Under the pieces are notes generated by a model. That model searched no databases and had not been told where the DNA came from. It saw nothing but the letters and a program-made list of their open reading frames with translations. A program made the position numbers and the translations under genes. From Ylistrum balloti (Eukaryota): 64,000 nt of DNA. Positions 4,222 through 40,300 of this stretch are shown piece by piece. The DNA is taken from assembly GCF_031769215.1 (NCBI RefSeq), contig NW_026782105.1:620001-684000 (forward strand). Reading direction: 5' to 3'. Every line of letters starts with the position of its first letter. The first letter of the stretch is position 1.

Positions 4222-4308
4222 CTACTTTGACAGTTTGCTTATCACTCGGATTAACGCACCATTCTCCTCTTTTAAGCGCTTGTTATCATCTTTAAGTTGA
4301 TCCATTTT
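4222..4308 (-). CDS. PPP1R12A: MYPT last coding exon, 87 nt including TAG: KMDQLKDDNKRLKEENGALIRVISKLSK*; leucine zipper
   Basis: Acceptor TTTTTACAG. Ends in the conserved ENGALIRVISKLSK, then the stop at 4222-4224. Confidence 0.96.
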   Translation of the reverse strand, partial: KMDQLKDDNKRLKEENGALIRVISKLSK

Positions 4309-7300: not shown

Positions 7301-10300
7301 TATCCAGATGGTAGCCATGCTCCTCAAATGAACCCCAAACTTTCAAAGACTTCCATACCAAGGGCTCCCACAGAAAATTAAATATTCTCCACTGCATCAT
7401 ATCAAGCTAACATTACATGACTAGATAGTGGTAGTTCTGTGCCATCTCTTCCTATCATTAGAGGAATTCAGTATGAAACCTATGATTTCAGTCAATTTTT
7501 ACATTCCTGAGTTTCAGTAAGTTTACCTAAAGGACTTAGAAAGGTTTACATCACAAACAAATTAGGATACTAATTGATACACTTCTAAAACTACCTTAGT
7601 GTTATGATTCGCTACAGAATTGTCCATGTAACTTGTCATTTTTGTAAATACAAATTATACCCTTGCTTATTGACAGTTTAAAATTGTTGCTATTTGCAGA
7701 GACTGTGGGAACCCTGCTACTGATCTAGGAACAGTGACTACATTAACGGTGTGTCAGAAGATGTGAGAAGAGGCAAACAACGCATGCATAGTCCAGTTAG
7801 AAGGGTGTTCCAAACTGTCTCAATGCAGATTAGGCAAAGGACAATGTTACCTATTTTGAAAGTTTCGATATGACTCGAGTAAGTGCTCTATTTTCTTCTT
7901 TTAATTTTGTGTTTTCAGCTCTAATTTTGTCCATATGCTGGAAATCAAGATAATGTTACAAATCAATTGTCTTGCCACAAAAAGTGCAAGGAAATTGCAT
8001 CAAGGGAGCTAACTCTACTATGAAGTTAAATATGACAGGTGCCTTGAATAATTATGAAAAAATTGAATTACTGTTTGTCAATCGTGTTGTTTTACTTTTT
8101 CTTTAAAACCTTTTTTAATAATAAAAAAAAAGTAAACAGCAATATCAAACCATTCAAAGCATCTTTCTTTACTCATGACTGCATGATATTAGTAATCTAA
8201 GATGTTACCTGTTAAAATGTAATCTTAAGTTTTGCCACCATCTTTTTTAATCATTTCAATTCATTATGGTACATCTTTTTTTTCTTTTTTTTTGAAATCC
8301 TTGGGACTTCAAGAGCAGTTGAAATAAGGATAAACCAGGATAAATTTGATTTTCTCTTCTATTTCCTTTTTTCCAATAAAAAATTGTTATTGCAATAATA
8401 CAAGACCATAATCTTTAGAACTTGCTGCAGAATACCAAGACTATAGAAAACTTGTTACAATACACTAATATATCAATTGTGTTCCTAAATTCCTCAAATA
8501 CAATTTTTAACAGATTTGACATGGAGTGCTTGAATATATAAATCTCTCCTTATTGTTTTATGTTTTCAGCTCTAATCATAGCTTTATGCTGGAAGTCAAT
8601 ACAACATACATCAGCTACCTTTATGTAAAATAGTGTGAAGAATCTGTATCAAGGGAGCTAACTCTAATACGAAGTTAAAAGATAGGTGCCATGATTGTTT
8701 ATTTCATTGTAAAAGTGTATTTCTTTTTGTTATTCACTTGATATTTTTTGCTTTTTTCAAATCAATGATTAAAATGACAATTTGTATTAGAAACTCAGAG
8801 CACCTTTCTTTGTAACGATAACGAGATATTAGCAATGAATGTATTTTAATTTGAGTTAGTAGAAAATGAAAAGCGAGCTTTTATTAATAGAGAAACATCT
8901 GGCTTACAGTTAAACTATGATTTCAGTTTTTCCAAAACTTAAAATTAATTGGTATGCAGGAATAAGTAAAATATCAACATATGTTGCTATTGTGACTTTA
9001 GAAAAACTTGAATAGTCAGTAAGGCTGAACAGATTCATATTTATCTGTATTGATTGACATCAATACGATACCACTACAACTCTTTACCTTCAATTCTTCT
9101 TCCATCTCAGAAAGTTTTCGTTCTAATGCCCGTTTTTCCTGCAAATACAAAACATACAAAATTTAAATTGACATAGATTTGCAATTTGAAATTTTAGCCT
9201 ATTAAATCAAATCTTACAATCAAGTCCTAGTTGCCTTCCCTTCGTAAGCAATTGAATACTTCAAGAAATATATTGTTTCAAACATGAACGTTTTTGGGTT
9301 CATTTCAAGTGTTTTATGTTTATTTATAATGAAATTCACATATGAACCATTATGGAAGAAAAATAATTGCAACAAATGACATTAAACTTTGTATATTATT
9401 TCAATCTCTTCGTAAGAAGAACTACATAATCTAGCATGACTTACAAAAGCGTTTAATATATTTTTACATAAAAGAATTTAAATTAAACATAATCAATTTC
9501 AGCCTCAATTCTTTTATATGTATACTGTAAGATCTTTTATGTCCTATTGTATTGGAAATGCATACTCGTTTATCATTTGAATCAGATGCCTTATTTGCCT
9601 CCGTCCGTTTCACTAGACGATCAAGTTCTGCCTTAGCATCTAGTAACTCCTTCTTTGTCCTATCCAGCTCTTTACGTAGTCTGTCTGTCGTATATTTTTC
9701 GTCTTCATATAGCTAGTGGAGAAAAATCATTAAAGTATGGTGTAACATGAAACAAATGGCATCCACGTACATCACTACATAGTGCTATATATTATACACT
9801 TATAACATCTACTGTATCTATATGGAAATGAGTACATGCCTGGTAATACACACGCTCACAGATATTCCTGTTTAGTAAAATTATCAACTGATTCAAAATT
9901 ATTAACCTGTAATAAGCTGACCTCGTAAGCTTAATGCAGAATAAGACTGATCTAATTTGCAGTGCATGTCGGTGGTATCAGCATCACAGTTAGATGGAAT
10001 CAGACTTATCAAACAAGACCATGATTTGATTAAACTTACTACCAGGGTAATTGGTTTTACATTAAAGAAACAATCGATACAGGTTATTTTAACATCAAAA
10101 TCTCCATATTTGTAACTAAATCATACAAATGACAGATCCTAAACAGAACTTAGAGACAGGTACGTGATTAGACTGATCACACATTCACATCTTCACAACT
10201 GCTGACAAAACATACAGCAATTAAACTAAATCAACTACATAGTAAAAGACATGAAATAAAAAATAATCCACAATATATAAATCGCCTTACATACATGTAG

Positions 10301-13300
10301 ATGGTTTTGACAAATGGAGATTTCCTAGAAATATCATGAATGACCTTGGTCCTCTTTGAGAATCTTAATATTATTATAGGCCAACATCTCATCACTAGCT
10401 TCTCTACCTCTCTCTATATATTTTCCATATTTAACCGTTTATCCCAGTAGTTCATTTGTTAGAAACCTCAACTTTGAGAATATGAACCTTTAACCTTATA
10501 GAATTTTAGGAAATCCCAGAAACAAAAGTAGATGGATAGACAGATGCCTTCATATAAACAATTAAACTCATGTTTTTTGACTGATGTATATATAAATAGT
10601 ATATATAGATATATGAATATGAATAATATAACTCTAACATATACATAAATAACCCTTAGATATATACAAATAGTACAACCCTTAGATATATACAAATAGT
10701 ATAACCCTTAGATATGTATAAATAGTATAACCCTTAGATATATATAAATAGTACAACCCTTAGATATATATAAATAGTACAACCCTTAGATATATATAAA
10801 TAGTACAACCCTTAGATATGTATAAATAGTATAACCCTTAGATATATATAAATAGTACAACCCTTAGATATATATAAATAGTACAACCCTTAGATATATA
10901 TAAATAGTACAACCCTTAGATATATATAAATAGTATAACCCTTAGATATATATAAATAGTACAACCCTTAGATATATATAAATAGTACAACCCTTAGATA
11001 TATATAAATAGTACAACCCTTAGATATATATAAATAGTATAACCCTTAGATATATATAAATAGTACAACCCTTAGATATGTATAAATAGTACAACCCTTA
11101 GATATGTATAAATAGTATAACCCTTAGATATATATAAATAGTACAACCCTTAGATATGTATAAATAGTATAACCCTTAGATATATATAAATAGTACAACC
11201 CTTAGATATATATAAATAGTATAACCCTTAGATATATATAAATAGTATAACCCTTAGATATATATAAATAGTACAACCCTTAGATATGTATAAATAGTAC
11301 AACCCTTAGATATATATAAATAGTATAACCCTTAGATATATATAAATAGTACAACCCTTAGATATATATAAATAGTATAACCCTTAGATATATATAAATA
11401 GTACAACCCTTAGATATATATAAATAGTATAACCCTTAGATATATATAAATAGTATAACCCTTAGATATATATAAATAGTATAACCCTTAGATATCTATA
11501 AATAGTATAACCCTTAGATATATATAAATAGTACAACCCTTAGATATGTATAAATAGTATAATCCTTAGATATATATAAACAGTACAACCCTTAGATATA
11601 TATAAATAGTATAACCCTTAGATATATATAAATAGTACAACCCTTAGATATGTATAAATAGTATAACCCTTAGATATATATAAACAGTACAACCCTTAGA
11701 TATGTATAAATAGTATAACCCTTAGATATATATAAATAGTATAACCCTTAGATATATATAAATAGTATAACCCTTAGATATATATAAATAGTACAACCCT
11801 TAGATATGTATAAATAGTACAACCCTTAAATATACATATATAGTATAACCCTTAGATATATATAAATAGTACAGGCCTTAGATATACATAAATAGTACAA
11901 GCCTTAGATATATATTAAAAGTACTGGTACAATCCTTAGTACAACCCTCAAATATGAATTGGATGGATTTTTGTACGTAACTCTATGTGGCTCCTCCACA
12001 ATACAAACAAGTGGGGAAGGGTATGAAATTGTAAAATCTTCAATGTGTTTTTTTATCGCCTTCTGGTGACAAACCTTTTTATAATTAGAGTCGAGGGAGG
12101 GTGTTGACTGATAGTGGTCAGCATAGGAGCTAGGTCGGGACGAATACTTGTCACCAACATCTGATGTTGAACTGTACTGCCCTCTGTGGCGATAAGAACT
12201 CTGGAAAAAAAAAGTTACGCCATTTCAATATAACTTTCAACCTGAACATTAGATTATGACTAAAAAGTAAAAAAGAACACATATCTACCAATATAAATTA
12301 CCATATGTCTATCAATTCTTAAACTGCATTTTTACACATGCATGAGGTGTATCTAACCTGTGCCGTTATTCTACTGTGATCCTCAGAGAAGAACCTGTGC
12401 AGTAATCGCCTCTGCTTGGACACTTCCATATCACATCTACTAAGTTTACATAATTATACAATTGCTTTGAGTCCTCCTAGCTCTCTGTAAAATCTACAAA
12501 CTTCTACACATGCTTCTTAAAATTTCAAACCATGTTTACATTCATAATACATTTTTTGTGTTACTTTCCAGATGATAATCCACTTCTTTTATACACACAG
12601 TCACTCAACATCCATATATCAAACGATGTTTAATGAAACTTGGCAAAAGTATGTTCAGATTAAATGCACATTAACTCCGATACCAATAATTTATAAATAA
12701 GTTTGATATCACCAAAAGTTATTTATAAAATGTTAAAACATCCAACAATAGAACTACACAACGTCCTCAGAAAAAGTCAATATGACAACACCATTTGACA
12801 TTGAACAATGGTACCAAAGCATAGGACAGTAGGGTAAAGTAGGTGCCTGGAACACTCCACACTGGGTCAGATACACTCATTATACAGGGATGTCCTTCCC
12901 AGGCTAAATGTCTCGCTTTACAAATTTACAACAAATACTAGATTTTTCTTTTGGAAGAGCAAAGTAATATTTGTAAAACGAAAACTACTTCCAACAAAGA
13001 GGCCAAGTGTCATTTTACTGTCAAGGTATTTTAAAGTTTTAAAATTTTAAAGGATTTATTCAAATTGAGTTTAAAAGGTTTGACAAAGTGGCTTATTGAT
13101 GCGTAGTACATGATAGGTAATGGCAGACCTACACCTATACCTTTCATCAGAACACTGTTTACAGTATGCATCACTGCACACAAATGTAAACTAAATCTGC
13201 TGGAGCATATAACTTAACTACAGAGTTACTATTGGGTACTGTGTGTGGTTTTTTGGTACTTCAGCTTGGGTGTCATTTATGGTATTTATCGTGAGATTGT

Positions 13301-19300: not shown

Positions 19301-22300
19301 CCATCTTGTTCCATCTTTACACATTTTAGTGTTTACTTAGCCCCATTTGGAACCTCTTGGGACATCATCCGTTTATTATTTGTATTCCTCTACATCCCTT
19401 CCTTGAGCTGAACTTAGTCTATCAATTTTTACTTGGCCCACTATCACTATCTACTTCATCTAATATTTATTTGATATACTCCACCTCATTATAAAGAACT
19501 TTTAATTTCATCCAAACCATGCTATTCAGAGCAATTATTTTAGATGTCATATTTAAGTACAGGGATTTTTGAAAAAAAAAAAATGCTCAACTTCAATAGA
19601 ACAAGCCAGCAATCAACTAAACACTTGACACACTTGTCAAACTATATAAATATTCATTACTTACAATTGACCTTTAATAGCAGAATCTAATCCCACCCTA
19701 TCTATCAATCCTTACTGAATACAAACACAAACAGTTGAGACACTTAAGCACCTGGTTCTATACACCACACCAAGTCCCTAGTTCTCTACAACCTTATCAG
19801 GGAACACCTAATGTATTAATTCAATAACATTTGCATCTATTAGAACCTACAGGATTAGCTTGTTGATAAGAAAGCTACAACCTTAACAACATGAACTACA
19901 AAGTTCTCAGACAAAATTGCATGAAAAGAACTAGCTTATGGTGATATAGGGAGGAGCGATATATAGGTACATATACTGGGTCAAGTAAATCAGTGGTAAC
20001 TCACACTTGGTCTAGGTCAGGATGTCAGTGGTAACTCACACTTGGTCTAGGTCAGGATGTCAGTGGTAACTCACACTTTGTCTAAGTCAGGATGTCAGTG
20101 GTACCTCACACTTGGTCTAGGTCAGGATGTCAGTGGTAACTCACACTTTGTCTGGGTCAAGATGTCAGCGGTAACTCACAGTTGGTCTAGGTCAGGATGT
20201 CAGTGGTAACTCACACTTGGTCTAGGTCAGGATGTCAGTGGTAACTCACACTTGGTCTAAGTCAGGATGTCAGTGGTAACTCACAGTTGGTCTAGGTCAG
20301 GATGTCAGTGGTACCTCACACTTGGTCTAGGTCAGGATGTCATTAGTACCTCACAGTTGGTCTGGGTCCAGGATGTCATTAGTACCTCACAGTTGGTCTG
20401 GGTCCAGGATGTCATTAGTACCTCACAGTTGGTCTGGGTCCAGGATGTCAGCGGTAACTCACACTTTGTCTGGGTCAAGGATGTCAGTAATAACTCACAG
20501 TTGGTCTAGGTCAGGATGTCAGTGGTAACTCACACTTGGTCTAGGTCAGGATGTCACTTGGTCTAGGTCAGGATGTCATTAGTACCTCACACTTGGTCTA
20601 GGTCAGGATGTCATTAGTACCTCACAGTTGGTCTGGGTCCAGGATGTCATTAGTACCTCACAGTTGGTCTGGGTCCAGGATGTCATTAGTACCTCACAGT
20701 TGGTCTGGGTCCAGGATGTCATTAGTACCTCACAGTTGGTCTAGGTCAGGATGTCAGTGGTACCTCACAGTTGGTCTGGGTCAGGGTGTCATTAGTACCT
20801 TACAGTTGGTCTAGGTCAGGATGTCAGTGGTAACTCACACTTTGTCTGGGTCAAGGATGTCAGTAGTAACTCACAGTTGGTCTAGGTCAGGATGTCAGTG
20901 GTAACTCACACTTGGTCTAGGTCAGAATGTCAGTGGTAACTCACACTTTGTCTGGGTCAAGATGTCAGCGGTAACTCACACTTTGTCTGGGTCAAGGATG
21001 TCAGTAATAACTCACAGTTGGTCTAGGTCAGGATGTCAGTGGTAACTCACACTTGGTCTAGGTCAGGATGTCATTAGTACCTCACACTTGGTCTAGGTCA
21101 GGATGTCATTAGTACCTCACAGTTGGTCTGGGTCCAGGATGTCATTAGTACCTCACAGTTGGTCTGGGTCCAGGATGTCATTAGTACCTCACAGTTGGTC
21201 TGGGTCCAGGATGTCATTAGTACCTCACAGTTGGTCTAGGTCAGGATGTCAGTGGTACCTCACAGTTGGTCTGGGTCAGGGTGTCATTAGTACCTTACAG
21301 TTGGTCTAGGTCAGGATGTCTGTGGTACCTCATTTATTTGGTTAGATCAATTAAATAAATTGAACTACATATACAGCCTGGGTCAAGTTGGTCAGTAGAA
21401 CCTAATATGTATTCTCAAGTCTGGATCAGGTATATTAACATTTCCACTTAGGTCATGTTTAATTTTTGACTTATGTTATTTTAGTCCAGATGTTCTAAAC
21501 ATGTCATATTAATGTACATAGAATTTCCTGCCTCTGAATGAACAATCCTTTGTCTAGCTTAGTAGATAAGTTTCTAGCTAAGTGGATGTTCTTCAAGGTC
21601 TGGTTTGTTTAGATTTTGGTTTCTTACCAACTAACAGGTATACCAAGTAGGTACAAGGCAGTAACTACAAGTTCAGTTGATAACTCTCGGGTAGAGTTTC
21701 TTTTATCTGTAGTAAACCTCATTTCCACAATATCATATAACACTATAGAAATAGGGCTGATTTTCTTACCCTCAGGAGTATCAACATGTGTATTGATCCA
21801 ATAAGATTTATAATTTCTTTCCATCTTTGTAAATATCAAATTACTTCATTGATCTCCTACTTACTCTACACAAAAAGAAATCTAATCCAATAATGCTCTT
21901 ATAATCATCCTGACTAGTGCTTTATTTCTGATTTTTTTTACTTTAGCGAGTATATTTTCTTTGTATACTGTATAAAGTTCTCAGGACTGACTATCAAATT
22001 TGTTACCACCAAGGGGATACACATCATAAAGGAAGGATATGAATTTGATACAGGAGAATGTGAATTCTGATAGTATCAATGCTTTATCTATCTCCTTCAC
22101 AGCATTCACATCAAATAAAAACAAAAACAAGGTATGGGATTCCTTAAAAATTTCCACAATTTGTTTTCCCTCATTCCAATTTTTGTACGTATTTCACATG
22201 ACATTTCGGTAAAGTTGTTTTTTCTTCCACATTAGTTGTCTGCTTTTGTTTTTAATGCACATGCGAGTCTATCACAGATTAATATGAGCAGTCCATACAA

Positions 22301-25300
22301 AACCTCGGCAGTTAGAAAGTGCAGCCTGTTCATAGTAAGATAGTAAGAGTTTGGTTCCATTTACAAAAAACCCATTATCTTATCTATCAGTGGCAATTGT
22401 ACAATGGTTCAATGATTCAGATATCTATTACATATATACATTTAAAACAGTAAAAATTTCCTATCCTGACACCCTGTCTTACCTAACTTATCAACTCTAC
22501 TAATCAAGAAAACCTGTTTATTTTGACATTCTGCCTAATGTCACTTTTGTCCTATTACAGTTTGCAGTAGATATAATCCCAGCTACTTTTCCTAGTTCCC
22601 ACCAATCGAGTTGGCCATATCCTGTTATATTTCTTCCCGCCCAGCAGAATTACACAATGTTACACCCCATCCCAACCTCAGACATGTCTGAAAGATAAGA
22701 ATCAATTCATTAGCAGGTTGATATCTGCCCGACTTCATCAGTCTGCCATGGTCCACATTGTGTACTGGGATAGAGAGAGCCTTGTATTGGTGTAGTCAGT
22801 AATGTATAGCCACTGCCCAATACCCACTAATAATTACATACAAGTTACATACAACTGTCACTGTTAAAATAAGGATAACTCAGTGTCAAGTCAGTTCTGT
22901 CTAAACAAAACCAAGGTGATTAATCAGGTTCTGTGATTAACCAGAAAGTTCTATGTACTCGGTGATTAACCAGAAAGTTCTATGTACTCCGTGATTAACC
23001 AGAAAGTTCTATGTACTCGGTGATTAACCTAAAAGTTCTATGTACTCCATGATTAACCTAAAAGTTCTATGTACTCCGTGATTAACCAGAAAGTTCTATG
23101 TACTCCGTGATTAACCTGGAAGTTCTATGTACTCCGTTATTAACCTGAAAGTTCTATGTACTCGGTGATTAACCTAAAAGATCTATGTACTCCATGATTA
23201 ACCTGAAAGTTCTATGTACTCGGTGATTAACCAGAAAGTTCTATGTACTCGGCGATTAACCTGAAAATTCTATGTACTCGGTGATTAACCTGAAAGTTCT
23301 ATGTACTCCATGATTAACCTGAAAGTTCTATGTACTCCGTGATTAACCTGAAAGTTCTAAGTACTCCATGATTAACCTGAATGTTCTATGTACTCCGTGA
23401 TTAACCTGAAAGTTCTATGTACTCCATGATTAACCAGAAAGTTCTATGTACTCCGTGATTAACCTGAAAGTTCTATGTACTCCGCTATTAACCTGAAAGT
23501 TCTATGTACTCCGTGATTAACCTGAAAGTTTTATGTACTGTGTGATTAACCTGAAAGTTCTATGTACTCCGTGATTAACCTGAAAGTTCTATGTACTCCG
23601 TGATTAACCTGAAAGTTCTATGTACTCGGTGATTAACCAGAAAGTTCTATGTACTCCGTGATTAACCTGAAAGTTCTATGTACTCCGTGATTAACCTGAA
23701 AGTTCTATGTACTCCGCTATTAACCAGAAAGTTCTATGTACTCCGCTATTAACCAGAAAGTTCTATGTACTCCGCTATTAACCAGAAAGTTCTATGTATT
23801 CCGTGATTAACCTGGAAGTTTTATGTCAGTTTTACAAGGTAATTAAGTATGGAATATGCTCTATAATAAGCATACAAAGTAATGCTCATAGTAAATGAAT
23901 GTCAACAGTACTTTTGGCTAATATTGATGTAAAACATACTTTATAATTAGTCACATAGTGTTTACAAAGTGTCAACAAAAGTCTATAAAATACCATTCTC
24001 TTTCACACTGTTAAATCATATAACTACAAGAATGAACAGATTATTTAATTTTCTTTCCGAAGCCCATTAACGTAATATATACCTCCTGAATGAGCCATTA
24101 AATTGTATATTGTAAAACGAACTGATATTGACCGACATGGAACCTTACAGTTTATCAAGCTACTGATCTGGTGTCATATACTATGTAACTTACATTAGAG
24201 TTTCAATGTCATTAAGATATGGCTTTACAAATATCGTGTAACCGAATCCAGAATTTACTGGTATTATATCAACCCTAGTAAATTGTAAAATTATTTTGAA
24301 AAAACGTACATTAAGTATAAATGCCAAATGGTCATTCATCAGGCTATATTAATGAATCATAAAAATCATAATTACAGGTTAGAACTATGGCTATCATATG
24401 ACACAATAACAGGAAATATGCTGACCGGCCGTGATATTGACGATAACCCATAAGAACTTCCATACAATGACCCTGATCCACCTCCAAGGCTTGATAAGCT
24501 GCTCGTCGACCCAGATCGAGAACTGTAGTTGGACCCAAGGCCTGAACTCATCCCAGAACTTAATGGAACAGAGCTAGTAGAACTTCCATAGGAATTTCCA
24601 TATAGTCCACTTGTATAACTTCCTGTCAGGCTGCTGGGATAGCTCCCCAAGCTGTACCGATTATGGTATGAACCGTAAGACATAGTTATTGGTATATCCC
24701 AACTTTCGAAAAAAAAGTGTAGATGTGTGATTGATGTGGAAGTGTGTTGAAGCTGAAGGAATTCTGTACACCAAATCTACACAAGTACATTGTTCATGAT
24801 GCAGCCAGAAACCTAAAATCTCAGCACTAATATATCTAGATAAGGTGACTGAATCTAACACAGATCAGCACCTGTAGGCTGGCATAATGTCACTCCAAAA
24901 TCTAGGCACAAGTTGATGTGGAGATCTTTATACCGTGTGTTGGACCCTTACACTGTTACATCATGTAAAACAATTTTGTACAGTTTTTCACACCCATAGG
25001 GCTTTGTTTCCCAAAACACCTGTCTCTGTGACTCCAGGGGAGCTGTTAGTCCTAGGTGGGCTGGGAGGGGGAAGTCGAAAGTAATGATGTATAATTAACA
25101 ATGATGAGGTATGCACTGTAGTTGTGAGCCAGTGTAAATGTTAGCATGCTTGTCTGCTAGAACACTTCCTGAAAATACCAGAAATACAACATGTAGGTGT
25201 TTCCTCACACTAGGAACATAGTCCCCCTCCACACACATCAAACTTATGCCAGCAGCATCAACTTTGTTCAATTCAGCGTATGGTATGGTCCATCTGGTAC

Positions 25301-28300
25301 AGATTTCCAGAGGGGTGTGCAGGTTATTCCACTTCACCAGACCTGTAAATCCCAGTAGGGAAAACTCCAGGAAGCAAGTTAAATGTAGGCCTCCTAGGTA
25401 TATTTAGTAGTGAGAGTACACACACCTTGGATATATATACACTGAACAGACCCCCACCCCTGGTTAATATACATCAGTATATAGACATAGCAGATCAATT
25501 CTTTACTTTAACAATCAGGTAAAGTTTCCGAACTTATCCATGAGTGCCCTAAAACTAGTCATGTGATACCACGCAGCTATTTTGATAATATCTTAACACA
25601 TGTAATTATGAGTAATAAGTTGTGAGCCCTTCACTAGTGGTACCTATATGTAGGTGTATCATGTGTGGTACACAGGTCAAAACAGCTGGGCTATCATCAA
25701 CAAAACACAACTTCTGTCAATAGATAACATACACACCATAGATCAATCTACCAGATATACAAAGCAAGTGGCTTTTTCCACTTCCTTTTTATCTATGTTA
25801 GGTCAGTATATGAACATGATAGATTTTATTTTCATATAAATTGTCGTATCTTAAAATGGAAAATTTGTGAAATAAAAGAAACTATAAAACAAAACACCCA
25901 GATAAGATAGGAAAGTCTATAAGACAGAAGTGCCCAGGCTTCCATACAGAATGTAATCATCTGTAGAACTCGGTATCTTTTATGTGACATTTTGGGTTAA
26001 ATATGAACCAAACCTTGAAACTGATTCTGAACAGGAAGCAATGTGATATAATGGGGCAGATGGACAGACAGGATTACAGGAAATGTCTCTATTGTCTACC
26101 AATCTAATATGACAATGACCAAACCAATAGTTCTTGTCCTTTTGATGTTGACAAATTGATATACAAATAAAATGAAGACATCATAGCTCTGTACAAAGTG
26201 TATTTACATATCACAGATTGTACACAAACTGACACCATTATGATAAGCTATGGAGTTAAACCAAGTCTATGACAGGGGCCACCTAATTAACGTAGAAATC
26301 CTGTAGTAATTTCAATCTTCCTGTGTTATTATAATGTAAACTCTTGCGTATAAAATTTTCAATATTATCAAAAAGGAAAACTTAAGTAAAATTTTATTTT
26401 ATGACAATTATAAAACATATCGTCCCAAGATAGAAAAGAGCACTTAATGTGGAAACCAGCTTAACAGGGATAAATCACAACGAAAAGCATTTAATTCTCT
26501 AAAACCAACGTTAGATTTCTTATATCGCATGTAAGTAAAAGCACAAATAAACTTCTTTAACTTGACTATCCAATAAATACAAGAGAAATAATTGCCACAA
26601 ATAAGTTGCCAGTAAGAAGGCACATATTAACAAGATAAGTCTATAATAGACCACCTCATTCCATGGACAGATTCAGTATATTAATGTGGATTTTTATGTA
26701 AAGTGATCTGAACCGGCTACTGTGTTTGAAGTGCCCAGCCCAGCACCACACACAGCCATGTGATCTAGTAAGCCTGGTGACAGCTGACTGGCCCCAACTA
26801 TCTTTGTCTACATATCTAATCTAGGAATTATAAACATATACTGATGTTGAAACAAGAAGCTATTGTTTATCTTAAATATAATTCACATACATTACTTGGG
26901 AGGTATTCCTCAACAGATGGGCCCAGTTGGTATTTTCTAACTATTTGATAATGTTATCTAGCTTCCACATTAATTCAGAAGACAACTAATTTTTCTAATT
27001 AAACAAGAAAATAGAGAGGTATAACTCAGTTTATACTGAGGGCTGAGACTTGAATTTCACAACTGATGTTCAATCTGAAAAGTATTTAGATTTAAAATTT
27101 GGCTAGGTAAGGTGTGCATAGGAAAAATTTAAACACATTTGACAAAGTGACATAATTTTATGTTTAAACTGGATACATACTTTGGTTTAGCACTTGTAAG
27201 TAGAACAGTGTGTGACAATTAAAATTCAGACTGTCTCACTAATAGAAAGAAGGACAGAGTACAAACCTGTACTGACGACAATGGGAAACTACCAATGTTT
27301 CTCCCATGTTATGAACAGGAAGCAAACACATATATCTTCTGATTTAAAGTAAAAAGGAATACTAACAGGACAACAATAAATCATTTAATGGCTTTCTGAA
27401 ATAGATGTGGGTGGGCTTATTAACAGACATGGGCTTATTACTGAATAAGCAATAACTAGCATCATTTTAAGGAGGGATATGGACAGTTAGTGCAATAAAA
27501 ATCCCATCTTGGCAATGTAAGAAAGTATGATATAATTAAACTTAAGACATCAAATTAAGTATTCTTTTTTTTAATCATACCCTACATCATATTGATTCAG
27601 CAAGTAACACCTAATGTTAACAAGGAGTTCTTTATTATGAACAAAATGTCTTGATCTTTTCTCACATCAAAACTGAAGCATACTTACAGTAAATCTAAAC
27701 ATTTTTTTTCTGATGAATAGCTCTTTCATGTTGGAGATACAAAACCTCCAAGATTCCTTATCAATTTATCTCTCCCTTTTTTTCACAACAGACTTTGATG
27801 TCAGCTCCGATTCATTGGTAGAGCTAGGTCACCTGATTACTTGATGAAATACTCATCAACTCAAATTACTTTCACTGTAATTGTTGCACAACCATTGCTA
27901 TCTTTATTTAAGCAAACTTAACGACAAATTTACTCATATTACTGCAATATCTCCGTCTGTATACCTTTCATACTGAAAGACACTTTTCTCATTAAAATGT
28001 GAAAACTGATTCATCACATAGCTACCGTGTTATTCCACCCAAATCATCTAACTACTGTAAACAGACATATCATAGCAGTAATCTAATTTTAGCCCTCTTC
28101 CGCTGTAACTACTATGCTAAAATATGATAGAGCTAATTGCAGTTTCTGGATGTGGTTGATACACCAATCATTGTAGATGTTCTAGTCCGTCAGTGCATTT
28201 ACTTGCCAAGAAGTGATATTGTGCTAAAATTTGACTGCACCATTCAAGTGTGTTTACAGTATCTTGTTTTCAGTGACATAACATCTATTCCATAACTACC

Positions 28301-31300
28301 CCTTTATCAGTAGTATAATATCCCCTGAATTCCTTACTAGCATCTATTACATCAATCTGTTATGAATACATATTTAGTACCAGAGATAGTTGGTTCTTTA
28401 ATTATGCATGAAAAGAGCTTATAAATAAACTATGGTTCTCTGTGTAAGTACCCATTAACAAAATGGGTAATCCGAAAATATTTTTATTTCAAAATATTAG
28501 CATGACTTGGCCTGACCATTGAGATGCCCAACTTTAGCATTAAGTACTAAGAGATTAATACAATCAGTGTACACAGTACATGCATTCACGGCTGTACCAA
28601 TATCACAACCTTATCTAGAGTAAACAATCAGCTCATCCTACATCAATAAATCTACACTGATATGTCAAAGTTTTTAGTGTTGACACAAGATTAGCCCTAC
28701 ACAGTTTAACAAAAGGTTATACATCCTAAACACCTGCATATTTAACCAACTTTAAATAAAACACTTTCTTATTTCATTGACAAATATTCCTTTTAAAATA
28801 ATTGTGTATTGCTCAAATGTGCATGACATTCCTCCAACAGATATAACTACAATAATGTAGGGTTTTATTTTATAACTAGAAAGTGTTTATTTTCTACTAA
28901 AAACAACATCAAATTTCTCTTTGATGTCTATTTCAGCAGTGAATATGGTTAGCTTATAAACCAGTAATCCTTAAGTAGAGTTGTGAGCTGGTTCATTGTA
29001 ATAAGATACAGTCCATAACATCAAGATGACAAGGCAACAATGCACGAAATAGTGCTCAACTGTATACAGATACTTTATGTGAAAGCAAAAACTATAAAGG
29101 TAGTGTGGTAGACTGAAACATCCTCAACTGTGAGCAGATTTTAAGTTGGTGCAATTCTCCTATTGGTACAGATCTTAAAAAAACTTTAATAAACTTTTTG
29201 AAGAACACAAACACTTGAATTTCTTATTTTGCAACTGCCATACTAGTACCTGGGTATCAACATCAGACTATAATAAAGGTATCTGGTAAACATCAAACTA
29301 CAATACAGGTATCTAATAAACATCACACTACCATACAGGTATCTGGTAAACATCAAACTACCATCAGGTATCTGGTAAACATCAAACTACCATACAGGTA
29401 TCTGGTAAACATCAAACTACCATACCAGGTATCTGGTAAACATCACACTACCATACTAGTACCTGGTATCAACATCAGACTATTATAATAAAGGTATCTG
29501 GTAAACATCAAACTACCATCAGGTATCTGTTAAACATCAAACTACCATACAGGTATCTGGTAAACATTAAACTACCATCAAGTATCTAGTAAACATCAAA
29601 CTACCATCAAGTATCTAGTAAACATCAAACTACCATCAGGTATCTGGTAAACACCAAACTACCATACAGGTATATTGTAAACATTAAACTACCATCAAGT
29701 ATCTAGTAAACATCAAACTACCATCAGGTATCTGGTAAACACCAAACTACCATACAGGTATCTGGTAAACATTAAACTACCATCAGGTATCTGGTAAACA
29801 TCAAACTACCATACAGGTATCTGGTAAACATCAAACTACCATCAGGTATCTGGTAAACACCAAACTACCATACAGGTATCTGGTAAACATTAAACTACCA
29901 TCAGGTATCTGGTAAACATCAAACTACCATACAGGTATCTGGTAAACATCAAACTACCATCAGGTATCTGGTAAACATCACATTACCATACTAGTACCTG
30001 GTATCAACATCAGACTATTATAATAAAGGTATCTGGTAAACATCAAACTACCATACAGGTATCTGGTAAACATCAAACTACCATACAGGTATCTGGTAAA
30101 CATCAAACTAACATACAGGTCTCTGGTAAACATCAAGCTACCATACAGGTATCTGGTAAACATCAAACTACCATACAGGTATCTCGTAAACATCAAACTA
30201 CCATACAGGTATCTGGTAAACATCAAACTACCATACAGGTATCTAATAAACATCAAACTACCATCAGGTATCTGGTAAACATCAAACTACCATACAGGCA
30301 TCTGGTAAACATCAAACTACCATACAGGTATCTGGTAAACATCAAACTACCATACAGGTATCTGGTAAACATCAAACTACCATCAGGTATCTGGTAAACA
30401 TCAAACTACCATACAGGTATCTGGTAAACATCAAACTACCATCAGGTATCTGGTAAACATCAAACTAACATACAGGTATCTGATAAACATTAAACTACCA
30501 TCAGGTATCTGGTAAACATCAAACTACCATACTGGTATCTGGTAAACATCAAACTACCATACAGGTATCTGGTAAACATTAAACTACCATCAGGTATCTG
30601 GTAAACATCAAACTACCATACTGGTATCTGGTAAACATCAAACTACCATACAGGTATCTGGTAAACACCAAACTGGCATCTTGTTAAAAAATTCCTACCT
30701 TATCTTCAGTCTCTTTCTTTTCTTCTTTTTCCTCTTCTTTTTCATCATCTTCCTAAAATCAGAATTGCATCTCTGGTCAATTTCATTCTATAACAATTAC
30801 CAATATCATCAATACCAAACTATAATAACAGTGATATTCAAATTTGTGATATAATCAATAAAAAGAATTTAAAGACAGATAATGTAACAATTGCGTTGAC
30901 AGAAATTGGTTTAATTTTTTTTTTTTTTTTGTCAATACACCTGATAAGCTGAAAACATCAGCACTGAAAAAAAATTGAACTTGAAAACAAAAGTATGTAT
31001 GGAAGACTAAACAATATGGCTACATAGACATGCTGAATATATAATGAAACATTTGTAATGGATTAATGATGAACACTTTCCTTTGGAATGATTTTCTGAG
31101 GTTCAGCAGAAGGAACAATACAGAACATGCTGTTTGGACGGAACAGAGTGTGTTTTCTAAATAGGAAACAATTACTCACTAGTCATAACTGAATTGTATG
31201 TCAAAGGTACGACATATCTACACCAAAGCAGGGAAAGTTTTCAGATCAGCATTGTCAATGCCTTTTACAATAACAAAGAATGGTTTAATCTGTTGGGTGT

Positions 31301-34300
31301 AAATGGCTAGAATGCACATTCTGATTTCCTTGACAAATGAATTATCACTTGTACACATCCTGGGGCAAACTGCAGGGTGCAAGCATGAATAGGGAAGATT
31401 GCATGCATAATGTTTCTGGAAGTGAACATGAATTGTGTTCAAGGCAAGTATCAAAGTAAGGCAAGGAAGATATTTTAAGTGTGAAGCATGAAGCAAGTAT
31501 CATGTGTAAGGTAATAAATATTTATTGTGTGTAAGGTAAGGAACATGTATTGTGTGTAAGGTAAGGAAAATGTATTGTGTGTAAGGTAAGGAAAATGTAT
31601 TGTGTGTAAGGTAAGGAACATGTAGTGTGTGTAAGGTAAGGAAAATGTATTGTGTGTAAGGTAAGGAACATGTATTGTGTGTAAGGTAAGGAAAATGTAT
31701 TGTGTGTAAGGTAAGGAACATGTATTGTGTGTAAGGTAAGGAACATGTAGTGTGTGTAAGGTAAGGAAAATGTATTGTGTGTAAGGTAAGGAACATGTAG
31801 TGTGTGTAAGGTAAGGAAAATGTATTGTGTGTAAGGTAAGGAACATGTATTGTGTGTAAGGTAAGGAACATGTATTGTGTGTAAGGTAAGGAAAATGTAT
31901 TGTGTGTAAGGTAAGGAACATGTATTGTGTGTAAGGTAAGGAAAATGTATTGTGTGTAAGGTAAGGAACATGTAGTGTGTGTAAGGTAAGGAAAATGTAT
32001 TGTGTGTAAGGTAAGGAACATGTAGTGTGTGTAAGGTAAGGAAAATGTATTGTGTGTAAGGTAAGGAACATGTAGTGTGTGTAAGGTAAGGAAAATGTAT
32101 TGTGTGTAAGGTAAGGAACATGTAGTGTGTGTAAGGTAAGGAAAATGTATTGTGTGTAAGGTAAGGAACATGTATTGTGTGTAAGGTAAGGAACATGTAT
32201 TGTGTGTAAGGTAAGGAAAATGTATTGTGTGTAAGGTAAGGAACATGTATTGTGTGTAAGGTAAGGAACATGTAGTGTGTGTAAGGTAAGGAAAATGTAT
32301 TGTGTGTAAGGTAAGGAACATGTAGTGTGTGTAAGGTAAGGAAAATGTATTGTGTGTAAGGTAAGGAACATGTATTGTGTGTAAGGTAAGGAACATGTAT
32401 TGTGTGTAAGGTAAGGAAAATGTATTGTGTGTAAGGTAAGGAACATGTATTGTGTGTAAGGTAAGGAAAATGTATTATGTGTAAGGTAAGGAACATGTAT
32501 TGTGTGTAAGGTAAGGAAAATGTATTGTGTGTAAGGTAAGGAACATGTATTGTGTGTAAGGTAAGGAAAATGTATTATGTGTAAGGTAGAAAACATGCAT
32601 TTATTGTGTGCAGGACAGGGAGTATGTATAGTGTGTAAAACAGAGAACATGTATTGTGTGTAAGGAAGAAAATATGTATTATGAGTAAGACTGAAAACAT
32701 GTACTTACTAAACAATCTCTCCATTGGTTACTGTACTTTTAAATATTTATAAAGGCCATTGCATGCAGACCAAATTCTTATAGTGCCATATAATTCCTTC
32801 TTGTAAGTTGCATGAAGCCATTATTATCTTATTTATCCTAAACAAGCATGGCAGTCGTTCTAGAATGTGACCTATAACCCGATGACCTATTGATCCCAGG
32901 ATGTAAAAGGCTATTGTAAACCTCTGGTAAACTTCTGCCATGGCTTCAAAGTAACAGTGAAAGTCCAGAAGATATCATTGTGATTCAAATTAAATGGTAT
33001 CATCAATTGAATCCACAAGAATTTTACTTTTAATTCAAATCTTCAAATCAACCTGTATACGATTGCAAATGATGGTTCTGGATGATTTGTTTCAGTCATA
33101 AACACATGAAAGGAAGGTACTCATAAAAAACTTAGTACCGTCTCTTAATGTGTACTGGTGCGCTTTCTGTCTTGTGAGGGTTTTTTTTTTCCATCCTACA
33201 GATTTTTTTTTTGGTCCACATAAAAGTTGCACCCATATACAAGCATGTATTGTGTGTAAGACAGAAAACATGTATTGTGAGTAAGACAGAAAACATTGTG
33301 TAAGCTTGTAAGGTAGGGAATGTATTGTACATCAGACAGCAGAATTATGACAGAATGGTGTGTAAATATGAGTGAAGGCCAGCAAATAACCTGTTTACCT
33401 TTTTAAAACAAAAATCTATGGGCAATGTTAGAATTTTCTACAAATGAAACAAAAACACAACTTGCATTACACAAGGTTAATGATGTAGCAGCAGATAAAT
33501 GTGGAGATTAGTGTAGACAGTGATGATTTAATACTCACAGCAATGACAACATTAACCCATGAGTAAAGTTACAAACGAAGGACATTAAAACACAACAAAT
33601 GTGAATTAAAATGAACCATGATTAAGATAAATAATTCCCTCTACAAATTACAGGTTAGAAAAACACATTAATAAAGAACTTGTCAAATACATATATTCCA
33701 TATGAAATCAAATCCAAGGGAGATAACTTACATCATTTTTGGCATCATAGGACACTATACCCGTTGATCGTCTTTCCTTTCTTGTTCTCCGAGCTCGTAC
33801 TGTCCTCATATCATGGGATTTCTCTTGTGAGTCTGAAGAAACCAAAATTAAATTAAAGCAAACAGTTTCATTTAGTTTCTGTTTCAGTATTTTCAAAATT
33901 TCCAATTGATCAGTTACCAAAGTTTGTTTTAATAGATTTACCTAGTCTCCAATTTTTAGTTCTGCAAGCACTCCATTTAAACATCAGAACTTGATCAAGA
34001 TAACATTTCCCTTTCACTTGAAAAATTCAGCTCTTCTAATAAAATTCAATATACATTGCTCTATTCCTTCCCTTGGAAGTCAATATCTTTTGTCAATTTG
34101 TTTGATGCTTATCTGACACACCTACATTTCCAAAACTCAATGTTTACTGATTAAACTCTAAATAGAAGTCTGAATTATGAGCTTCCTGAAGATAACACAT
34201 TACATATACATATTCTGTAAGAACACATTTGCTTATTTTTGTATGAGCACACACTTTTTCACATTTTTGAAAGCACACAACAGCCAGCTGATTGACAAAC

Positions 34301-37300: not shown

Positions 37301-40300
37301 TCTAACCTGTCGACGTTCCTCTAGAGTACGCCGACGTAGCACCGTGGTGTCCTCTGTGGTGCTAACTTCCTTCTTAGTACTTTCTAGTCCAGGTACACGT
37401 TCACTGTCCTTCTGGGATCCAACCTCGGGTACTCGACTCTTGTCATCTGTAGAACTAGTACTGCTTGTTGTAGTTGTTGTCGTCCCAGTTGTCGTGGAAG
37501 TGACCTTTGATGGATCCTTTAAGGCTTTTTCTGCTTGCTGTATATCTTCTAACGTGACACCCTAGAATTCAGGCCATAAAAGTTTTTTCAAGATTATCAT
37601 AAATTCAATATTTGTCTTCATACTAGATCAGATTTCACAACTCTTGGCAAATATTTCAGATTGATAGGATCTTGTCACAATTGAAAGGATGCAAATATCG
37701 GGATGCAGATATCAGGAAGAGGATATGTAAGATTATATTGTATCAAAATTCATCAATGCTGATATGGTTTGAATGTTTAACGTTCTGTATGTCATCTATG
37801 TACAATTCCCAATAAACTTACATCTCCTTCATTAACACAACTGTGCAATGTCTTGGGCAAGTATATTCACATTTCTTTGTTAAGCATAATGCCATTTCCT
37901 AAGAGTATTCTATATGCAGTCCATCTTCCTATCACTTTAACATCCCAGCCAACAAGAGTGATTAACAAATTGTTACTGTATTTGCTGGTATTTAACTACC
38001 TGTGTGGACCTCCTTGTCTCCCGAGCACGCTTGGCCCGAGCCTTTCTTAGCGTCTCTGCCTCCTCATCTCGTTTTGGTGGTTCGTAAGATCTAGGTGACA
38101 GTAAACAAGCCATTGATAATCTCTTGAAAGATCTATCATCATGGTTTCCTATATCACTATAAAGTCTACATTCAATTCTCAACAGTAATTGTTAAGTTCA
38201 AGTCAGTATGTTATTTGACCTTTTCAGTGATTTGAATGTGAAACATGGCACTAGTATTAAAATCAAATTCACATGAAAAAAAATTCATAAACAACTTGAT
38301 AGCAAGATTTCCATGTGTAGTTCAAAATTTCTCTGCTTTCCCAAATTCATACTTTGAATTAAAACTGGTAACAAACAAGCAAACAATGCAAAAGTGCAAA
38401 CTGAAGCATGTCAACTTCTGTTAGTGCATTCTCATGAAGCATTCTCTTATGTTAATTATGATAATTGTTTTCTTATAAAAATCTGATCAAAACATTTAGG
38501 TTAAAATCTTATAAATTTAACATTTCCAAATAATTTGATTTTGGATATTATGTTACAGGTCAGCTATGGTTTTGTAACAGTTGTGATTACAGTTGGGAAG
38601 ACGCCCATTTGAGATAATGACATGTGATAGATTATCTGAGAATTAAGCCTGATATTTCTCTTTGCAGATTAAATCCAAATATTTCTCTGCAGAAATAATC
38701 TTCAGGTAAAAAAAAGTTGTTGTTTTTCAGTTTATCTATTCCAATACAAAATGTATTAATGTGGATGTTAAGTAATAACTGCGACAATGAAACAGACAAA
38801 CCTTTTACTAAATTGGTAATTAGAGTAGGGGGAGGTAATGATGTTAGATGATGACGATGATGACATAGACGATGACATGCTTGATCCAGTAGATGAGGTG
38901 GGTGTGGTTGAGCCAGAGAGGCGTATGTTGGCTGCAGCTGCTGATTCTCTTTCTCGTTCACGGCGTTCATTGTTCTCCTGCTGACGTGTGTAGTAGGGGA
39001 TGTACGCCGGTAAGTATGATGACGAGGTGGAGGTAAAGGAGGTTGGTCGTCGATAAGGTCCAGTGGATGTACTGCTATACTGTGAACCATACCTGTAACA
39101 TGAGTATTGCCACGATGGCAGTCACACTACAGCATGCCCAACATGCAATGTTATTGTAACCTGGTACTCATGCTAAATCGTATGTATAACCCAAACTTGT
39201 ACTTACTAACTCCTCTTCTTATCACAATGGCACCAGGGTTGAAATTGAAATGCAGCCATTTGTTGTGGGGATTTTCAGAAATTTTAGCATAAACAGTTTT
39301 TCTCAGAAAATGAAGCTTGACAGTAAGAAATTCAAAGATCAAGTCCCATATTTTGACAAAAACCCAAAAAATTACAGATTTCTAAAGATAATAATAATGG
39401 TCTGAGATTTAGACAGAAAAACTTTGAAATTGATGACATTTCAGTAAAGATAAACAGGCTAGTACCTAACAACATATATTAACATGAGCACCGGGTATAA
39501 CATCAATGTAACAAAAATCTGACACAGACATTGTGGCAGTCAAAACAATAAAACTATATTAGAAAATGGGTGATTCCTTAATAAAAACGTAACAAAAACA
39601 AATCAAGGGTAGAGCAGAAATTCTTGTCAACAGTGAAATGCATCAATTTCAAATTAAAATGTAGTCAGCCATGCATGAATTGATCCAGGCATCTTTAATG
39701 ACAGCAAATGATAATTAATATTTTAATAATGAACATTCACCAGCATGATGAAAGAAAGGATGATGAAACAATAAACCTTATTTAATACATACACCTTGAA
39801 CAATAACTTAACAATATAGACACAGAACAATTGCCATTAAACTTTGCCTGACCACTATTAAAGACTTTCAACCAAATTTTTAAACATTTTTAATGACATA
39901 TAAGGAAAGAGATTTATAATTTCGATAAATTCTCAGGAATTTTTGCCACAGATTTTCTTTCCCCTAAATGGGCCTTTTTGACTGATAATATCAAAAATGC
40001 CCAAATATGGAATGAATTTCCATCTTGAAGGTCTGAAATTTGTTGAAGATATAGACAGCTAACAGAAGGAAGATTTATTCTACATAGTTTTACACTTTTT
40101 AGCACTTTATATAGACAACCGTCTTCCAAGAACAACCAGTATGTTATACACATCAGCACCAAGACAACACTGACTGTCCCTAAGTACCAAACCATCATAA
40201 TTCTGTAAAATATCCACCATTACCTCATAATCTTACTCAACAAAAAGAAAATTACTATCAAACATTGTTCCTTTTATCTAGCTCGCCTAACTTCCAGGTG

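What the first reader, a model, noticed from the sequence alone, without database searches (positions are those of the whole stretch)
24426..24683. Hidden internal first exon could encode an invertebrate M20/M21-like small myosin-phosphatase subunit
Seen in sequence: a coding-like 86-codon exon lies in the 18.5-kb intron between exons 30699 and 12200. It starts at an ATG with A at -3, is preceded by UTR-like sequence (T8 run), and ends at a phase-0 donor. Splicing to 12200, 9712, 9138 and 4308 gives 86+42+49+17+28 = 222 aa, with only the coiled coil and leucine zipper (no RVxF, ankyrins or inhibitory Thr). Established: vertebrate M20/M21 small subunits are made from internal promoters of PPP1R12B and share these C-terminal exons. 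Inference: the single invertebrate MYPT gene may use the same architecture, either ancestrally or convergently.
Basis: partly seen in the sequence, partly recalled or inferred. Interest (0 to 1): 0.8.

Follow-up and report, generated by a model that had tools for sequence, protein, structure and literature searches.

The report
Conserved ATG-led extra exon in mollusc MYPT
A real, strongly conserved extra coding exon sits in an intron of a bivalve myosin-phosphatase targeting-subunit gene; it most likely starts a short, coiled-coil-only protein like the vertebrate M20 small subunit, but no spliced transcript was seen.

Summary
Window 24426-24683 (minus strand) is an 86-codon Ser/Gly/Tyr-rich open exon with ATG (A at -3), a T8 run upstream and a phase-0 GT donor. 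It lies in the 18.5-kb intron of a MYPT/PPP1R12-like gene. Joined to the four shared 3' exons it gives 222 aa (24.6 kDa).

It is not a chance ORF.
- It is single copy in the genome.
- It sits in the same intron in Mytilus edulis and in a second mytilid lineage.
- It is under strong purifying selection: all 15 sister-species differences are synonymous, and mytilid dN/dS is 0.04 at dS about 1.

Protein conservation starts at the ATG. The second mytilid lineage has an in-frame TGA 9 nt upstream and 1-nt indels there, so in that lineage translation must begin at the ATG. About 450 nt upstream are conserved between mytilids; nothing downstream of the donor is. Vertebrate M20/M21 and decapod short forms join a private first exon to the homologous shared exon.

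Against the reading:
- No spliced read or transcription start was obtained.
- Sister-species contigs are collinear with the genome.
- The M. edulis BRAKER annotation uses the exon as an in-frame cassette.

Verdict: the exon is real, the M20-like short isoform is probable (about 0.55), and the internal promoter is unproven.

The parts
24426..24683 (-). Alternative coding exon, 86 codons, Ser/Gly/Tyr-rich (69% S+G+Y), beginning with a conserved ATG
   Evidence: All 15 sister-species differences are synonymous. Homologues in mytilids have dN/dS 0.04. Single copy in the genome.
24681..24683 (-). Proposed start codon (A at -3)
   Evidence: The ATG is present in the window, M. edulis and four contigs of a second mytilid lineage; no sister-species difference was reported at it. 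Protein-level conservation starts here.
24684..24745 (-). Proximal upstream stretch (5'UTR-like), containing the T8 run and a TCTACA...TTTCGAA block shared with mytilids
   Evidence: Sister-species contigs run collinear to 24733/24738 and end at about 24743-24745 in two runs. The two listed differences here (24698, 24703) are non-synonymous in the exon's frame. The shared DNA block is seen.
24702..24704 (-). Candidate acceptor AG (24704-24703) with the exon starting at 24702; out of frame with the phase-0 upstream exon
   Evidence: Read. The G of the AG is C in the sister species (24703), so the site is not conserved.
24777..24779 (-). In-frame TAG that closes the frame 96 nt upstream of the ATG
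   Evidence: It bounds any in-frame cassette use to the acceptors at 24776 or 24752.
24420..24425 (-). Phase-0 splice donor GTCAGC
   Evidence: The homologous donor GTTTGT in mytilids is used by the M. edulis model.
12075..12200 (-). First shared exon (42 aa, Ser/Tyr-rich, ends ...NYKK)
   Evidence: Homologous to the M. edulis NSYSGRY...DYKK exon. It matches in position the exon that vertebrate M20 joins (HERLSRLE...DYKK).
9566..9712 (-). Shared coiled-coil exon (49 aa, LYEDEK...)
   Evidence: Matches Pfam PF15898 PRKG1_interact positions 5-48, E = 4e-4, below the family cut-off for this piece alone. 63% identical to M. edulis.
9088..9138 (-). Shared exon (17 aa, EKRALERKLSEMEEELK)
4222..4308 (-). 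Distal leucine-zipper terminal exon (28 aa plus stop TAG at 4224-4222)
7851..7937 (-). Second, alternative leucine-zipper terminal exon (28 aa plus stop), which the short form could also use
   Evidence: A counterpart lies in M. edulis at L004:30325-30414.
30699..30752 (-). Upstream acidic exon of the long isoform (18 aa, phase 0); it would be the donor side of any cassette use
   Evidence: The M. edulis models P0006 and P0007 show the homologous ...EEKDK exon.

Best explanation
The exon is a conserved, lineage-specific alternative exon of the single MYPT (PPP1R12-like) gene of a bivalve, and its own ATG is a translation start.

A transcript that begins in the 18.5-kb intron, most likely at a promoter within a few hundred bases upstream of the exon, would splice 24426 to 12200 and on through the shared exons. 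The product would be about 222 aa (24.6 kDa). Its first 128 residues are a Tyr/Ser/Gly-rich low-complexity stretch, presumably disordered. This is followed by the PRKG1_interact coiled coil and a leucine zipper. It has no RVxF motif, no ankyrin repeats and no inhibitory Thr sites.

By analogy with vertebrate M20/M21, it would pair through the shared coiled coil and zipper with the long MYPT, or with whatever else binds that zipper, and so modulate the holoenzyme.

Shown: the exon is real, it is under coding selection, the ATG and donor are conserved, and the stretch upstream of the ATG is non-coding in one lineage. Inferred: the internal promoter, the 24426|12200 junction in this species, and the binding partners.
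For: 1. Coding selection. All 15 differences from the sister species inside the exon are synonymous third positions. The second mytilid lineage against M. edulis gives dN/dS 0.04 at dS about 1, with 27 of 34 differences at third positions. Every indel among the taxa is a multiple of three.

2. Start at the ATG. The ATG has a purine at -3 in the window, M. edulis and the second mytilid lineage.
- Four independent contigs of the second mytilid lineage carry an in-frame TGA 9 nt upstream.
- In those contigs the stretch from the CATCAG acceptor, the one the M. edulis model uses, to the ATG is 41 or 42 nt, so it is not coding there.
- The window has an in-frame TAG at -96.
- The two listed sister-species differences upstream are non-synonymous in frame (Fisher P = 0.007 against the exon).

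3. Promoter-like asymmetry. About 450 nt upstream of the ATG are 64-76% identical between the two mytilid lineages, although synonymous sites are saturated. Nothing downstream of the donor aligns.

4. Splicing. The M. edulis annotation was built by BRAKER with RNA-seq (PMC9063065). It carries two transcripts at the locus, one with the exon joined to the homologous next exon and one without. No further conserved coding exon lies between 24426 and 12200.

5. Same architecture elsewhere.
- Vertebrate M20/M21 forms have a private first exon joined to the exon ending DYKK before LYE.
- M20 derives from MYPT2 by an alternative promoter (PMC13755552).
- Decapod short forms of 140-146 aa are annotated, and an mRNA-like contig has a complete 146-aa ORF with an upstream in-frame stop.

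6. Pairing. The shared 98-residue C-terminus of the M. edulis orthologue is modelled as a parallel in-register dimer. The score is 0.52 against a best control of 0.00. That mark was reached by 21 of 30 proteins solved as pairs of one chain and 0 of 23 solved as single chains. Runs agree in 100% of contacts and partner pLDDT is at least 87. The pass may come from memory of solved relatives.
Against: - No spliced read, no junction and no transcript start were observed. The four sister-species runs are only guessed to be RNA. Their contigs have depth 2-4.5 and cover 24408-24738 collinear with the genome. One seems to run 18 nt past the donor, so they may be pre-mRNA or DNA.
- Only 5 sister-species runs from 2 studies hold words of this exon. 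21 sister-species runs, in 8 studies, hold the last exon, including three on record as RNA.
- No protein of 47-327 aa starting with this exon exists in 5.8 billion database proteins apart from genomic ORFs, and the exhaustive search found no other relative.
- The M. edulis model P0006 uses the exon as an in-frame cassette after the acidic exon.
- In the window, acceptors at 24752 and 24776 would also read in frame.
- The donor has a weak +3 position.
- The first exon has no detectable similarity to the vertebrate M20 first exon.
Confidence: 0.55

Rival explanations
1. Ordinary cassette exon. The exon is included in the full-length MYPT mRNA between the acidic exon (30699) and exon 12200, through an in-frame acceptor (24752 or 24776 here; CATCAG| in M. 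edulis). It adds a Tyr/Ser/Gly-rich insert to the central or C-terminal linker, as the central inserts of vertebrate MYPT1 do. The ATG is then just an internal Met.
For: - The M. edulis BRAKER transcript P0006 does exactly this, and P0007 skips the exon.
- The frame is open from 24776 in the window, and both flanking exons are phase 0.
- The long isoform already has a similar Tyr/Ser-rich exon at 38771-39121.
- No short-form protein is in the databases.
Against: - The 5' extension is not conserved as protein. The second mytilid lineage has an in-frame TGA at -9 in four contigs, plus 1-nt length differences, yet keeps the exon at dN/dS 0.04.
- The window's extension shows only DNA-level likeness to the M. 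edulis one.
- The CATCAG acceptor is CATCAA in the window.
- The acceptors at 24752 and 24776 have poor pyrimidine tracts (read).
- Intron conservation is one-sided.
Confidence: 0.25
2. The short isoform exists, but this is not its first exon. The transcript starts at a non-coding exon further upstream in the intron, or at the main promoter, and enters through an acceptor such as 24702. The ATG is still the start of a short protein, but the promoter lies elsewhere.
For: - A good pyrimidine tract (T8) followed by AG lies at 24704-24703, and AG stands at the aligned place in mytilids: TTTCGAAG and TTGTGAAG.
- Entry there from phase 0 runs into stops quickly. That would leave the ATG as the first productive start (read).
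Against: - The G of that AG is C in the sister species, and sister-species contigs run through it collinear with the genome.
- No joint was seen in the 4.5 kb upstream that was laid.
Confidence: 0.12
3. First exon of a separate gene nested in the MYPT intron, which splices to exons other than the MYPT C-terminal ones.
For: The exon has its own ATG and a conserved upstream block. The junction to 12200 was not seen directly in this species.
Against: - No other conserved coding exon lies between 24426 and 12200.
- The phase fits exon 12200.
- The M. edulis model joins the homologous exons.
- The composition continues into exon 12200.
Confidence: 0.05
4. Chance open frame in low-complexity intron DNA, with no function.
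For: The peptide is low-complexity (69% S+G+Y) and has no Pfam match.
Against: All 15 sister-species changes are synonymous. dN/dS is 0.04 across mytilids with saturated dS. The position is syntenic in three lineages, and the exon is single copy.
Confidence: 0.02

Closest known systems
Vertebrate M20/M21 small subunit of myosin phosphatase (short products of PPP1R12B/MYPT2 from an alternative promoter)
   Same: - It is encoded inside a MYPT gene.
- A private first coding exon is joined to the shared exon that ends ...[DN]YKK just before the LYE coiled-coil exon.
- The product is about 20-25 kDa, with the PRKG1_interact coiled coil and leucine zipper and no PP1-binding or ankyrin part.
   Different: - The first exon is 86 aa and Tyr/Ser/Gly-rich, against about 34 aa (MSSLYTRSK...) in vertebrates, with no detectable similarity.
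- Promoter use and the protein itself are not demonstrated here.
- In M. edulis the same exon is annotated as a cassette of a longer model.
Decapod crustacean short 'PPP1R12B-like' proteins (140-146 aa; Penaeus, Procambarus, Cherax models and the mRNA-like contig L006)
   Same: These are invertebrate short forms made of a private N-terminus plus the ...DYKK exon and the coiled coil and zipper. L006 has a complete ORF with an upstream in-frame stop in a spliced contig.
   Different: The N-terminus is unrelated (MTLRDLKK...) and much shorter. Whether these come from inside the main MYPT gene was not established here (one search found no record).
Central-insert cassette exons of vertebrate MYPT1
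   Same: An optional Ser-rich segment in the linker of a MYPT protein. The M. edulis model treats this exon in that way.
   Different: Here the 5' extension needed for in-frame inclusion is closed by a stop in one lineage. Protein conservation starts at an ATG.
[quoted passage not shown]
   Same: A mollusc precedent for a unique N-terminal domain fused to the shared C-terminal coiled-coil part of a large muscle gene (PMC4410989).
   Different: It is a different gene and protein. It is cited only as an architectural analogue and was not analysed here.

Membership tests
M20/M21-type small subunit (short C-terminal product of a MYPT gene) | First coding exon lies in an intron of a MYPT gene and is in phase with the shared C-terminal exons | tested here: met
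   The exon lies between 30699 and 12200. The donor and all downstream exons are phase 0. The position is syntenic in M. edulis, whose model makes the join.
M20/M21-type small subunit (short C-terminal product of a MYPT gene) | Transcribed from an internal (alternative) promoter | tested here: inconclusive
   There are no joints or starts. The support is indirect: a 450-nt conserved upstream block, and sister-species contig ends at about 24743-24745 in two runs.
M20/M21-type small subunit (short C-terminal product of a MYPT gene) | Translation starts at the private exon's ATG | tested here: met
   This is comparative evidence only. There is an in-frame TGA at -9 and 1-nt indels upstream in four contigs of one mytilid lineage, whose exon is at dN/dS 0.04 against M. 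edulis. The window has a TAG at -96. It is not proven for the window species, where in-frame acceptors exist.
M20/M21-type small subunit (short C-terminal product of a MYPT gene) | Lacks RVxF, ankyrin repeats and the inhibitory Thr sites; keeps the coiled coil and leucine zipper | tested here: met
   The ankyrin exons (about 63134-61300) and the RRSTQ and RRSTG exons (about 38191 and 33800) lie upstream of the ATG. PF15898 is found on the M. edulis model and, partially, on window exon 9566-9712.
M20/M21-type small subunit (short C-terminal product of a MYPT gene) | First-exon sequence homologous to vertebrate M20 (MSSLYTRSK...) | tested here: not met
   BLASTP E = 4.5. The architecture is shared, but sequence homology of the private exon is not shown.
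M20/M21-type small subunit (short C-terminal product of a MYPT gene) | mRNA or protein of the short form observed | tested here: not met
   No spliced contig was found. No short protein with this N-terminus was found. Absence is weak evidence because the data are thin.
M20/M21-type small subunit (short C-terminal product of a MYPT gene) | Binds the C-terminal part of the large MYPT subunit | tested here: inconclusive
   This is a model only. The shared C-terminus dimerises in register, with score 0.52 against a best control of 0.00. The mark was reached by 21 of 30 pair-solved and 0 of 23 single-chain-solved proteins. Contact agreement is 100% and pLDDT is at least 87. The pass may come from memory.
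In-frame cassette exon of the long MYPT isoform | Conserved acceptor, and an open, conserved reading frame across the 5' end of the exon in all species | tested here: not met
   The frame is open in M. edulis and possible in the window. It is closed by TGA and frame-shifted in the second mytilid lineage. The CATCAG acceptor is CATCAA in the window.

The most novel reading that the evidence does not exclude
The intron just before the ...[DN]YKK exon of MYPT genes is an ancient bilaterian site for an internal promoter and a private first exon. On this reading, an M20-type small subunit exists in bivalves (this exon), decapods and vertebrates, and was overlooked in invertebrates. In bivalves it carries a Tyr/Ser/Gly-rich low-complexity head of possible muscle-specific use.
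Probability: 0.25. Interest if true: 0.7.

Novelty: new variant of a known kind. Interest (0 to 1): 0.5.

Why it matters
The third subunit of myosin phosphatase (M20/M21) is treated as a vertebrate feature of unclear function, and one paper states that none has been identified in Drosophila (PMC3723691). A bivalve MYPT gene that makes an M20-like product from the same intron would have two consequences. It would push the architecture back to the bilaterian ancestor, or show that it arose repeatedly. It would also offer a tractable system, bivalve smooth and catch muscle, for asking what the small subunit does.

If the exon turns out to be only a cassette, it is still a strongly constrained low-complexity insert that the M. 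edulis annotation includes or skips.

Tried and rejected
- Word-indexed protein searches were run with the exon (47-150 aa range) and with the relative's ORF (103-327 aa range). They gave only genomic ORFs and one M. edulis model.
- The exhaustive representative search gave two genomic ORFs only. Long isoforms hidden inside 50% clusters cannot be excluded.
- Full-length isoforms could not be queried, because the length window needs a long query and no reference for one exists.
- Both run searches found no run on record as RNA that holds the exon.
- The single read-laying run (23830-29255, chosen to avoid the flanking tandem repeats) gave no joints. Its loose-end table was filled by a dispersed repeat at 27395-27448. 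The junction partner at 12200 lies outside the 6-kb limit.
- Two metagenome scans, one with a peptide profile and one with a degenerate DNA pattern, found nothing.
- Rfam found nothing in 23800-31000.
- The exon shows no significant similarity to the vertebrate M20 first exon or to the long isoform's Tyr/Ser-rich exon.
- A look-up of the Penaeus short isoform's locus found no record.
- TATA-like and initiator-like motifs upstream were inspected by eye but are too weak to cite.
- An acceptor at 24702 was considered and down-weighted: it is out of frame, and its AG is lost in the sister species.

Full report
**What is in the sequence**

The window carries most of a MYPT/PPP1R12-like gene on the minus strand. 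From upstream to downstream it has:
- ankyrin-repeat exons near 63134-61300;
- the two inhibitory-site exons (RRSTQ near 38191, RRSTG near 33800);
- an acidic exon at 30699-30752;
- after an 18.5-kb intron, exons 12075-12200, 9566-9712, 9088-9138 and 4225-4308, the last ending in the leucine zipper and a stop.

There is an ATG with A at -3, a T8 run 26 nt upstream, 86 open codons and a phase-0 donor CCG|GTCAGC. The frame is open upstream to a TAG at 24779-24777. The five pieces add to 222 aa, 24.6 kDa, pI 9.35. The peptide is 69% Ser, Gly and Tyr and has no Pfam match.

**Is it a real exon?**

Yes.
- It is single copy in the 648.5-Mb assembly.
- A homologue lies in the same intron of the M. 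edulis gene, between the acidic exon and the NSYSGRY...DYKK exon. Homologues also occur on five further contigs, from four assemblies or runs, of a second mytilid lineage recovered from metagenome and Logan assemblies.
- All indels among these taxa are multiples of three.
- Between the two mytilid lineages dN/dS is 0.04 with dS about 1. 27 of 34 differences fall at third positions.
- Contigs of a sister species of the window's organism, laid on the window, differ at 15 places inside the exon. All 15 are synonymous third-position changes (P = 7e-8 if positions were random).

This excludes a chance ORF.

**Where does translation start?**

Protein conservation begins at the ATG. In the second mytilid lineage, four independent contigs carry an in-frame TGA 9 nt upstream of the ATG. 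Metagenome gene callers had read it as Trp under another genetic code, which is why two database ORFs seem to run on. In the same contigs, the stretch between the CATCAG acceptor (the one the M. edulis model uses) and the ATG is 41 or 42 nt.

That lineage keeps the exon under strong constraint, so its peptide can only be made from the ATG. In the window, the two listed sister-species differences upstream (24698, 24703) are both non-synonymous in frame (Fisher P = 0.007 against the exon). The second of them destroys the AG of the otherwise attractive acceptor at 24702.

**Signs of a promoter**

Between the two mytilid lineages, about 450 nt upstream of the ATG stay 64-76% identical, although synonymous sites are saturated. 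Nothing downstream of the donor aligns. From general knowledge, regulated cassette exons usually show conservation on both sides, so this one-sided pattern fits a promoter plus 5'UTR better. Two sister-species contigs from two runs end within 2 nt of each other, about 60 nt upstream of the ATG, while their other ends scatter. That is suggestive of a boundary, but it rests on only two observations.

**What argues against a first exon**

- No spliced read, junction or start was obtained.
- The runs that hold the exon are only guessed to be RNA, and their contigs have depth 2-4.5. They are collinear with the genome for 55 nt upstream, and in one case for about 18 nt past the donor. They may therefore be pre-mRNA or DNA.
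- Introns of the sister species are probably too diverged to lay, since about 17% of third positions differ. The lack of intron cover therefore says nothing.
- Only 5 sister-species runs from 2 studies hold words of this exon. 21 sister-species runs in 8 studies hold the last exon, three of them on record as RNA.
- No database protein of 47-327 aa begins with this exon.
- The M. edulis annotation was built by BRAKER with RNA-seq (PMC9063065). It has one transcript that skips the exon (P0007) and one that includes it in frame after the acidic exon (P0006), through 14 extra codons. From my knowledge of BRAKER, alternative transcripts need read hints, so at least one intron flanking the exon is probably read-supported in M. 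edulis. Which one cannot be told from here.
- In the window, in-frame entry is possible only through the weak acceptors at 24752 or 24776.

**Comparison with known systems**

Vertebrate short PPP1R12B products retrieved here start with a private exon (MSSLYTRSK...) joined to the shared exon HERLSRLE...DYKK, which precedes the LYE coiled-coil exon. M20 is stated to arise from MYPT2 by an alternative promoter (PMC13755552). The bivalve exon joins the homologous shared exon (SSYRH...NYKK before LYEDEK).

Decapod crustaceans have annotated short forms of 140-146 aa with the same join. One spliced, mRNA-like contig has a complete 146-aa ORF preceded by an in-frame stop. The architecture is therefore not confined to vertebrates, although one paper says no M20 has been identified in Drosophila (PMC3723691).

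The private exons show no sequence similarity to each other, so common descent of the exon itself is not shown. The shared 98-residue C-terminus of the M. edulis orthologue is modelled as a parallel in-register dimer:
- score 0.52, best control 0.00;
- the mark was reached by 21 of 30 proteins solved as pairs of one chain and 0 of 23 solved as single chains;
- contact agreement 100%, partner pLDDT at least 87;
- the pass may come from memory of solved relatives.

This is consistent with a short form pairing with the long one, but it does not show binding.

**Verdict**

The most likely reading (0.55) is an ATG-initiated short isoform of M20 type, probably from a promoter just upstream. An ordinary cassette exon (0.25), perhaps coexisting with the short form in some species, and a short form whose true first exon lies elsewhere (0.12) remain open. 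The finding is a plausible new variant of a known kind. It is of moderate interest and awaits a junction or cap read.

Noticed in passing
window 7851-7937 (minus): A second leucine-zipper terminal exon (HMDKIRAENTKLKEENRALTRVISKLSK plus stop) has a good acceptor. It is a duplicate of the distal one at 4222-4308. The same pair exists in M. edulis (L004:30325-30414 and 33213-33302), so mutually exclusive zipper exons look conserved in bivalves.
   Followed up: partly
window 6865-6886 (minus): This is the 22-nt piece noted earlier by the scan (s1-254238). It is flanked by ag and gt. Read after exon 9088-9138, it gives TGSYPF followed by a stop, which would be a zipper-less ending (read). No expression data were examined.
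   Followed up: partly
L004:27235-27252: M. edulis model P0007 contains an 18-nt microexon (LDYYMQ) with canonical splice sites between the DYKK and LYE exons. A simple search found no counterpart in window 9713-12074.
   Followed up: partly
L004:1-33305: The M. edulis annotation splits the MYPT gene into a 1035-aa upstream model and a 201/286-aa downstream model with an invented start (MTQILKKIPK...).
   Followed up: no
L003, L007 (proteins P0001, P0005): Mussel host DNA in metagenome and Logan assemblies was gene-called with TGA read as Trp. This gives ORFs that seem to extend upstream of the true ATG.
   Followed up: yes
window 27395-27448: A short dispersed repeat of about 50 nt is present in hundreds of sister-species contigs at very high summed depth (1500-4800). 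It has no Rfam match.
   Followed up: partly
window 22933-23826, 29259-30674, 11000-11924, 19990-21332: Large minisatellite arrays (periods 29, 30, 26 and 35/70 nt; 31-47 copies) fill much of the 18.5-kb intron on both sides of the exon.
   Followed up: no
window 38771-39121 (minus): The long isoform has its own Tyr/Ser-rich exon (YRYGSQYSSTS...), similar in composition to the candidate exon but not in sequence.
   Followed up: partly
L006:209-649: A spliced, mRNA-like Logan contig, probably from a decapod, encodes a complete 146-aa coiled-coil-only MYPT-like protein with an in-frame stop upstream of its ATG.
   Followed up: partly
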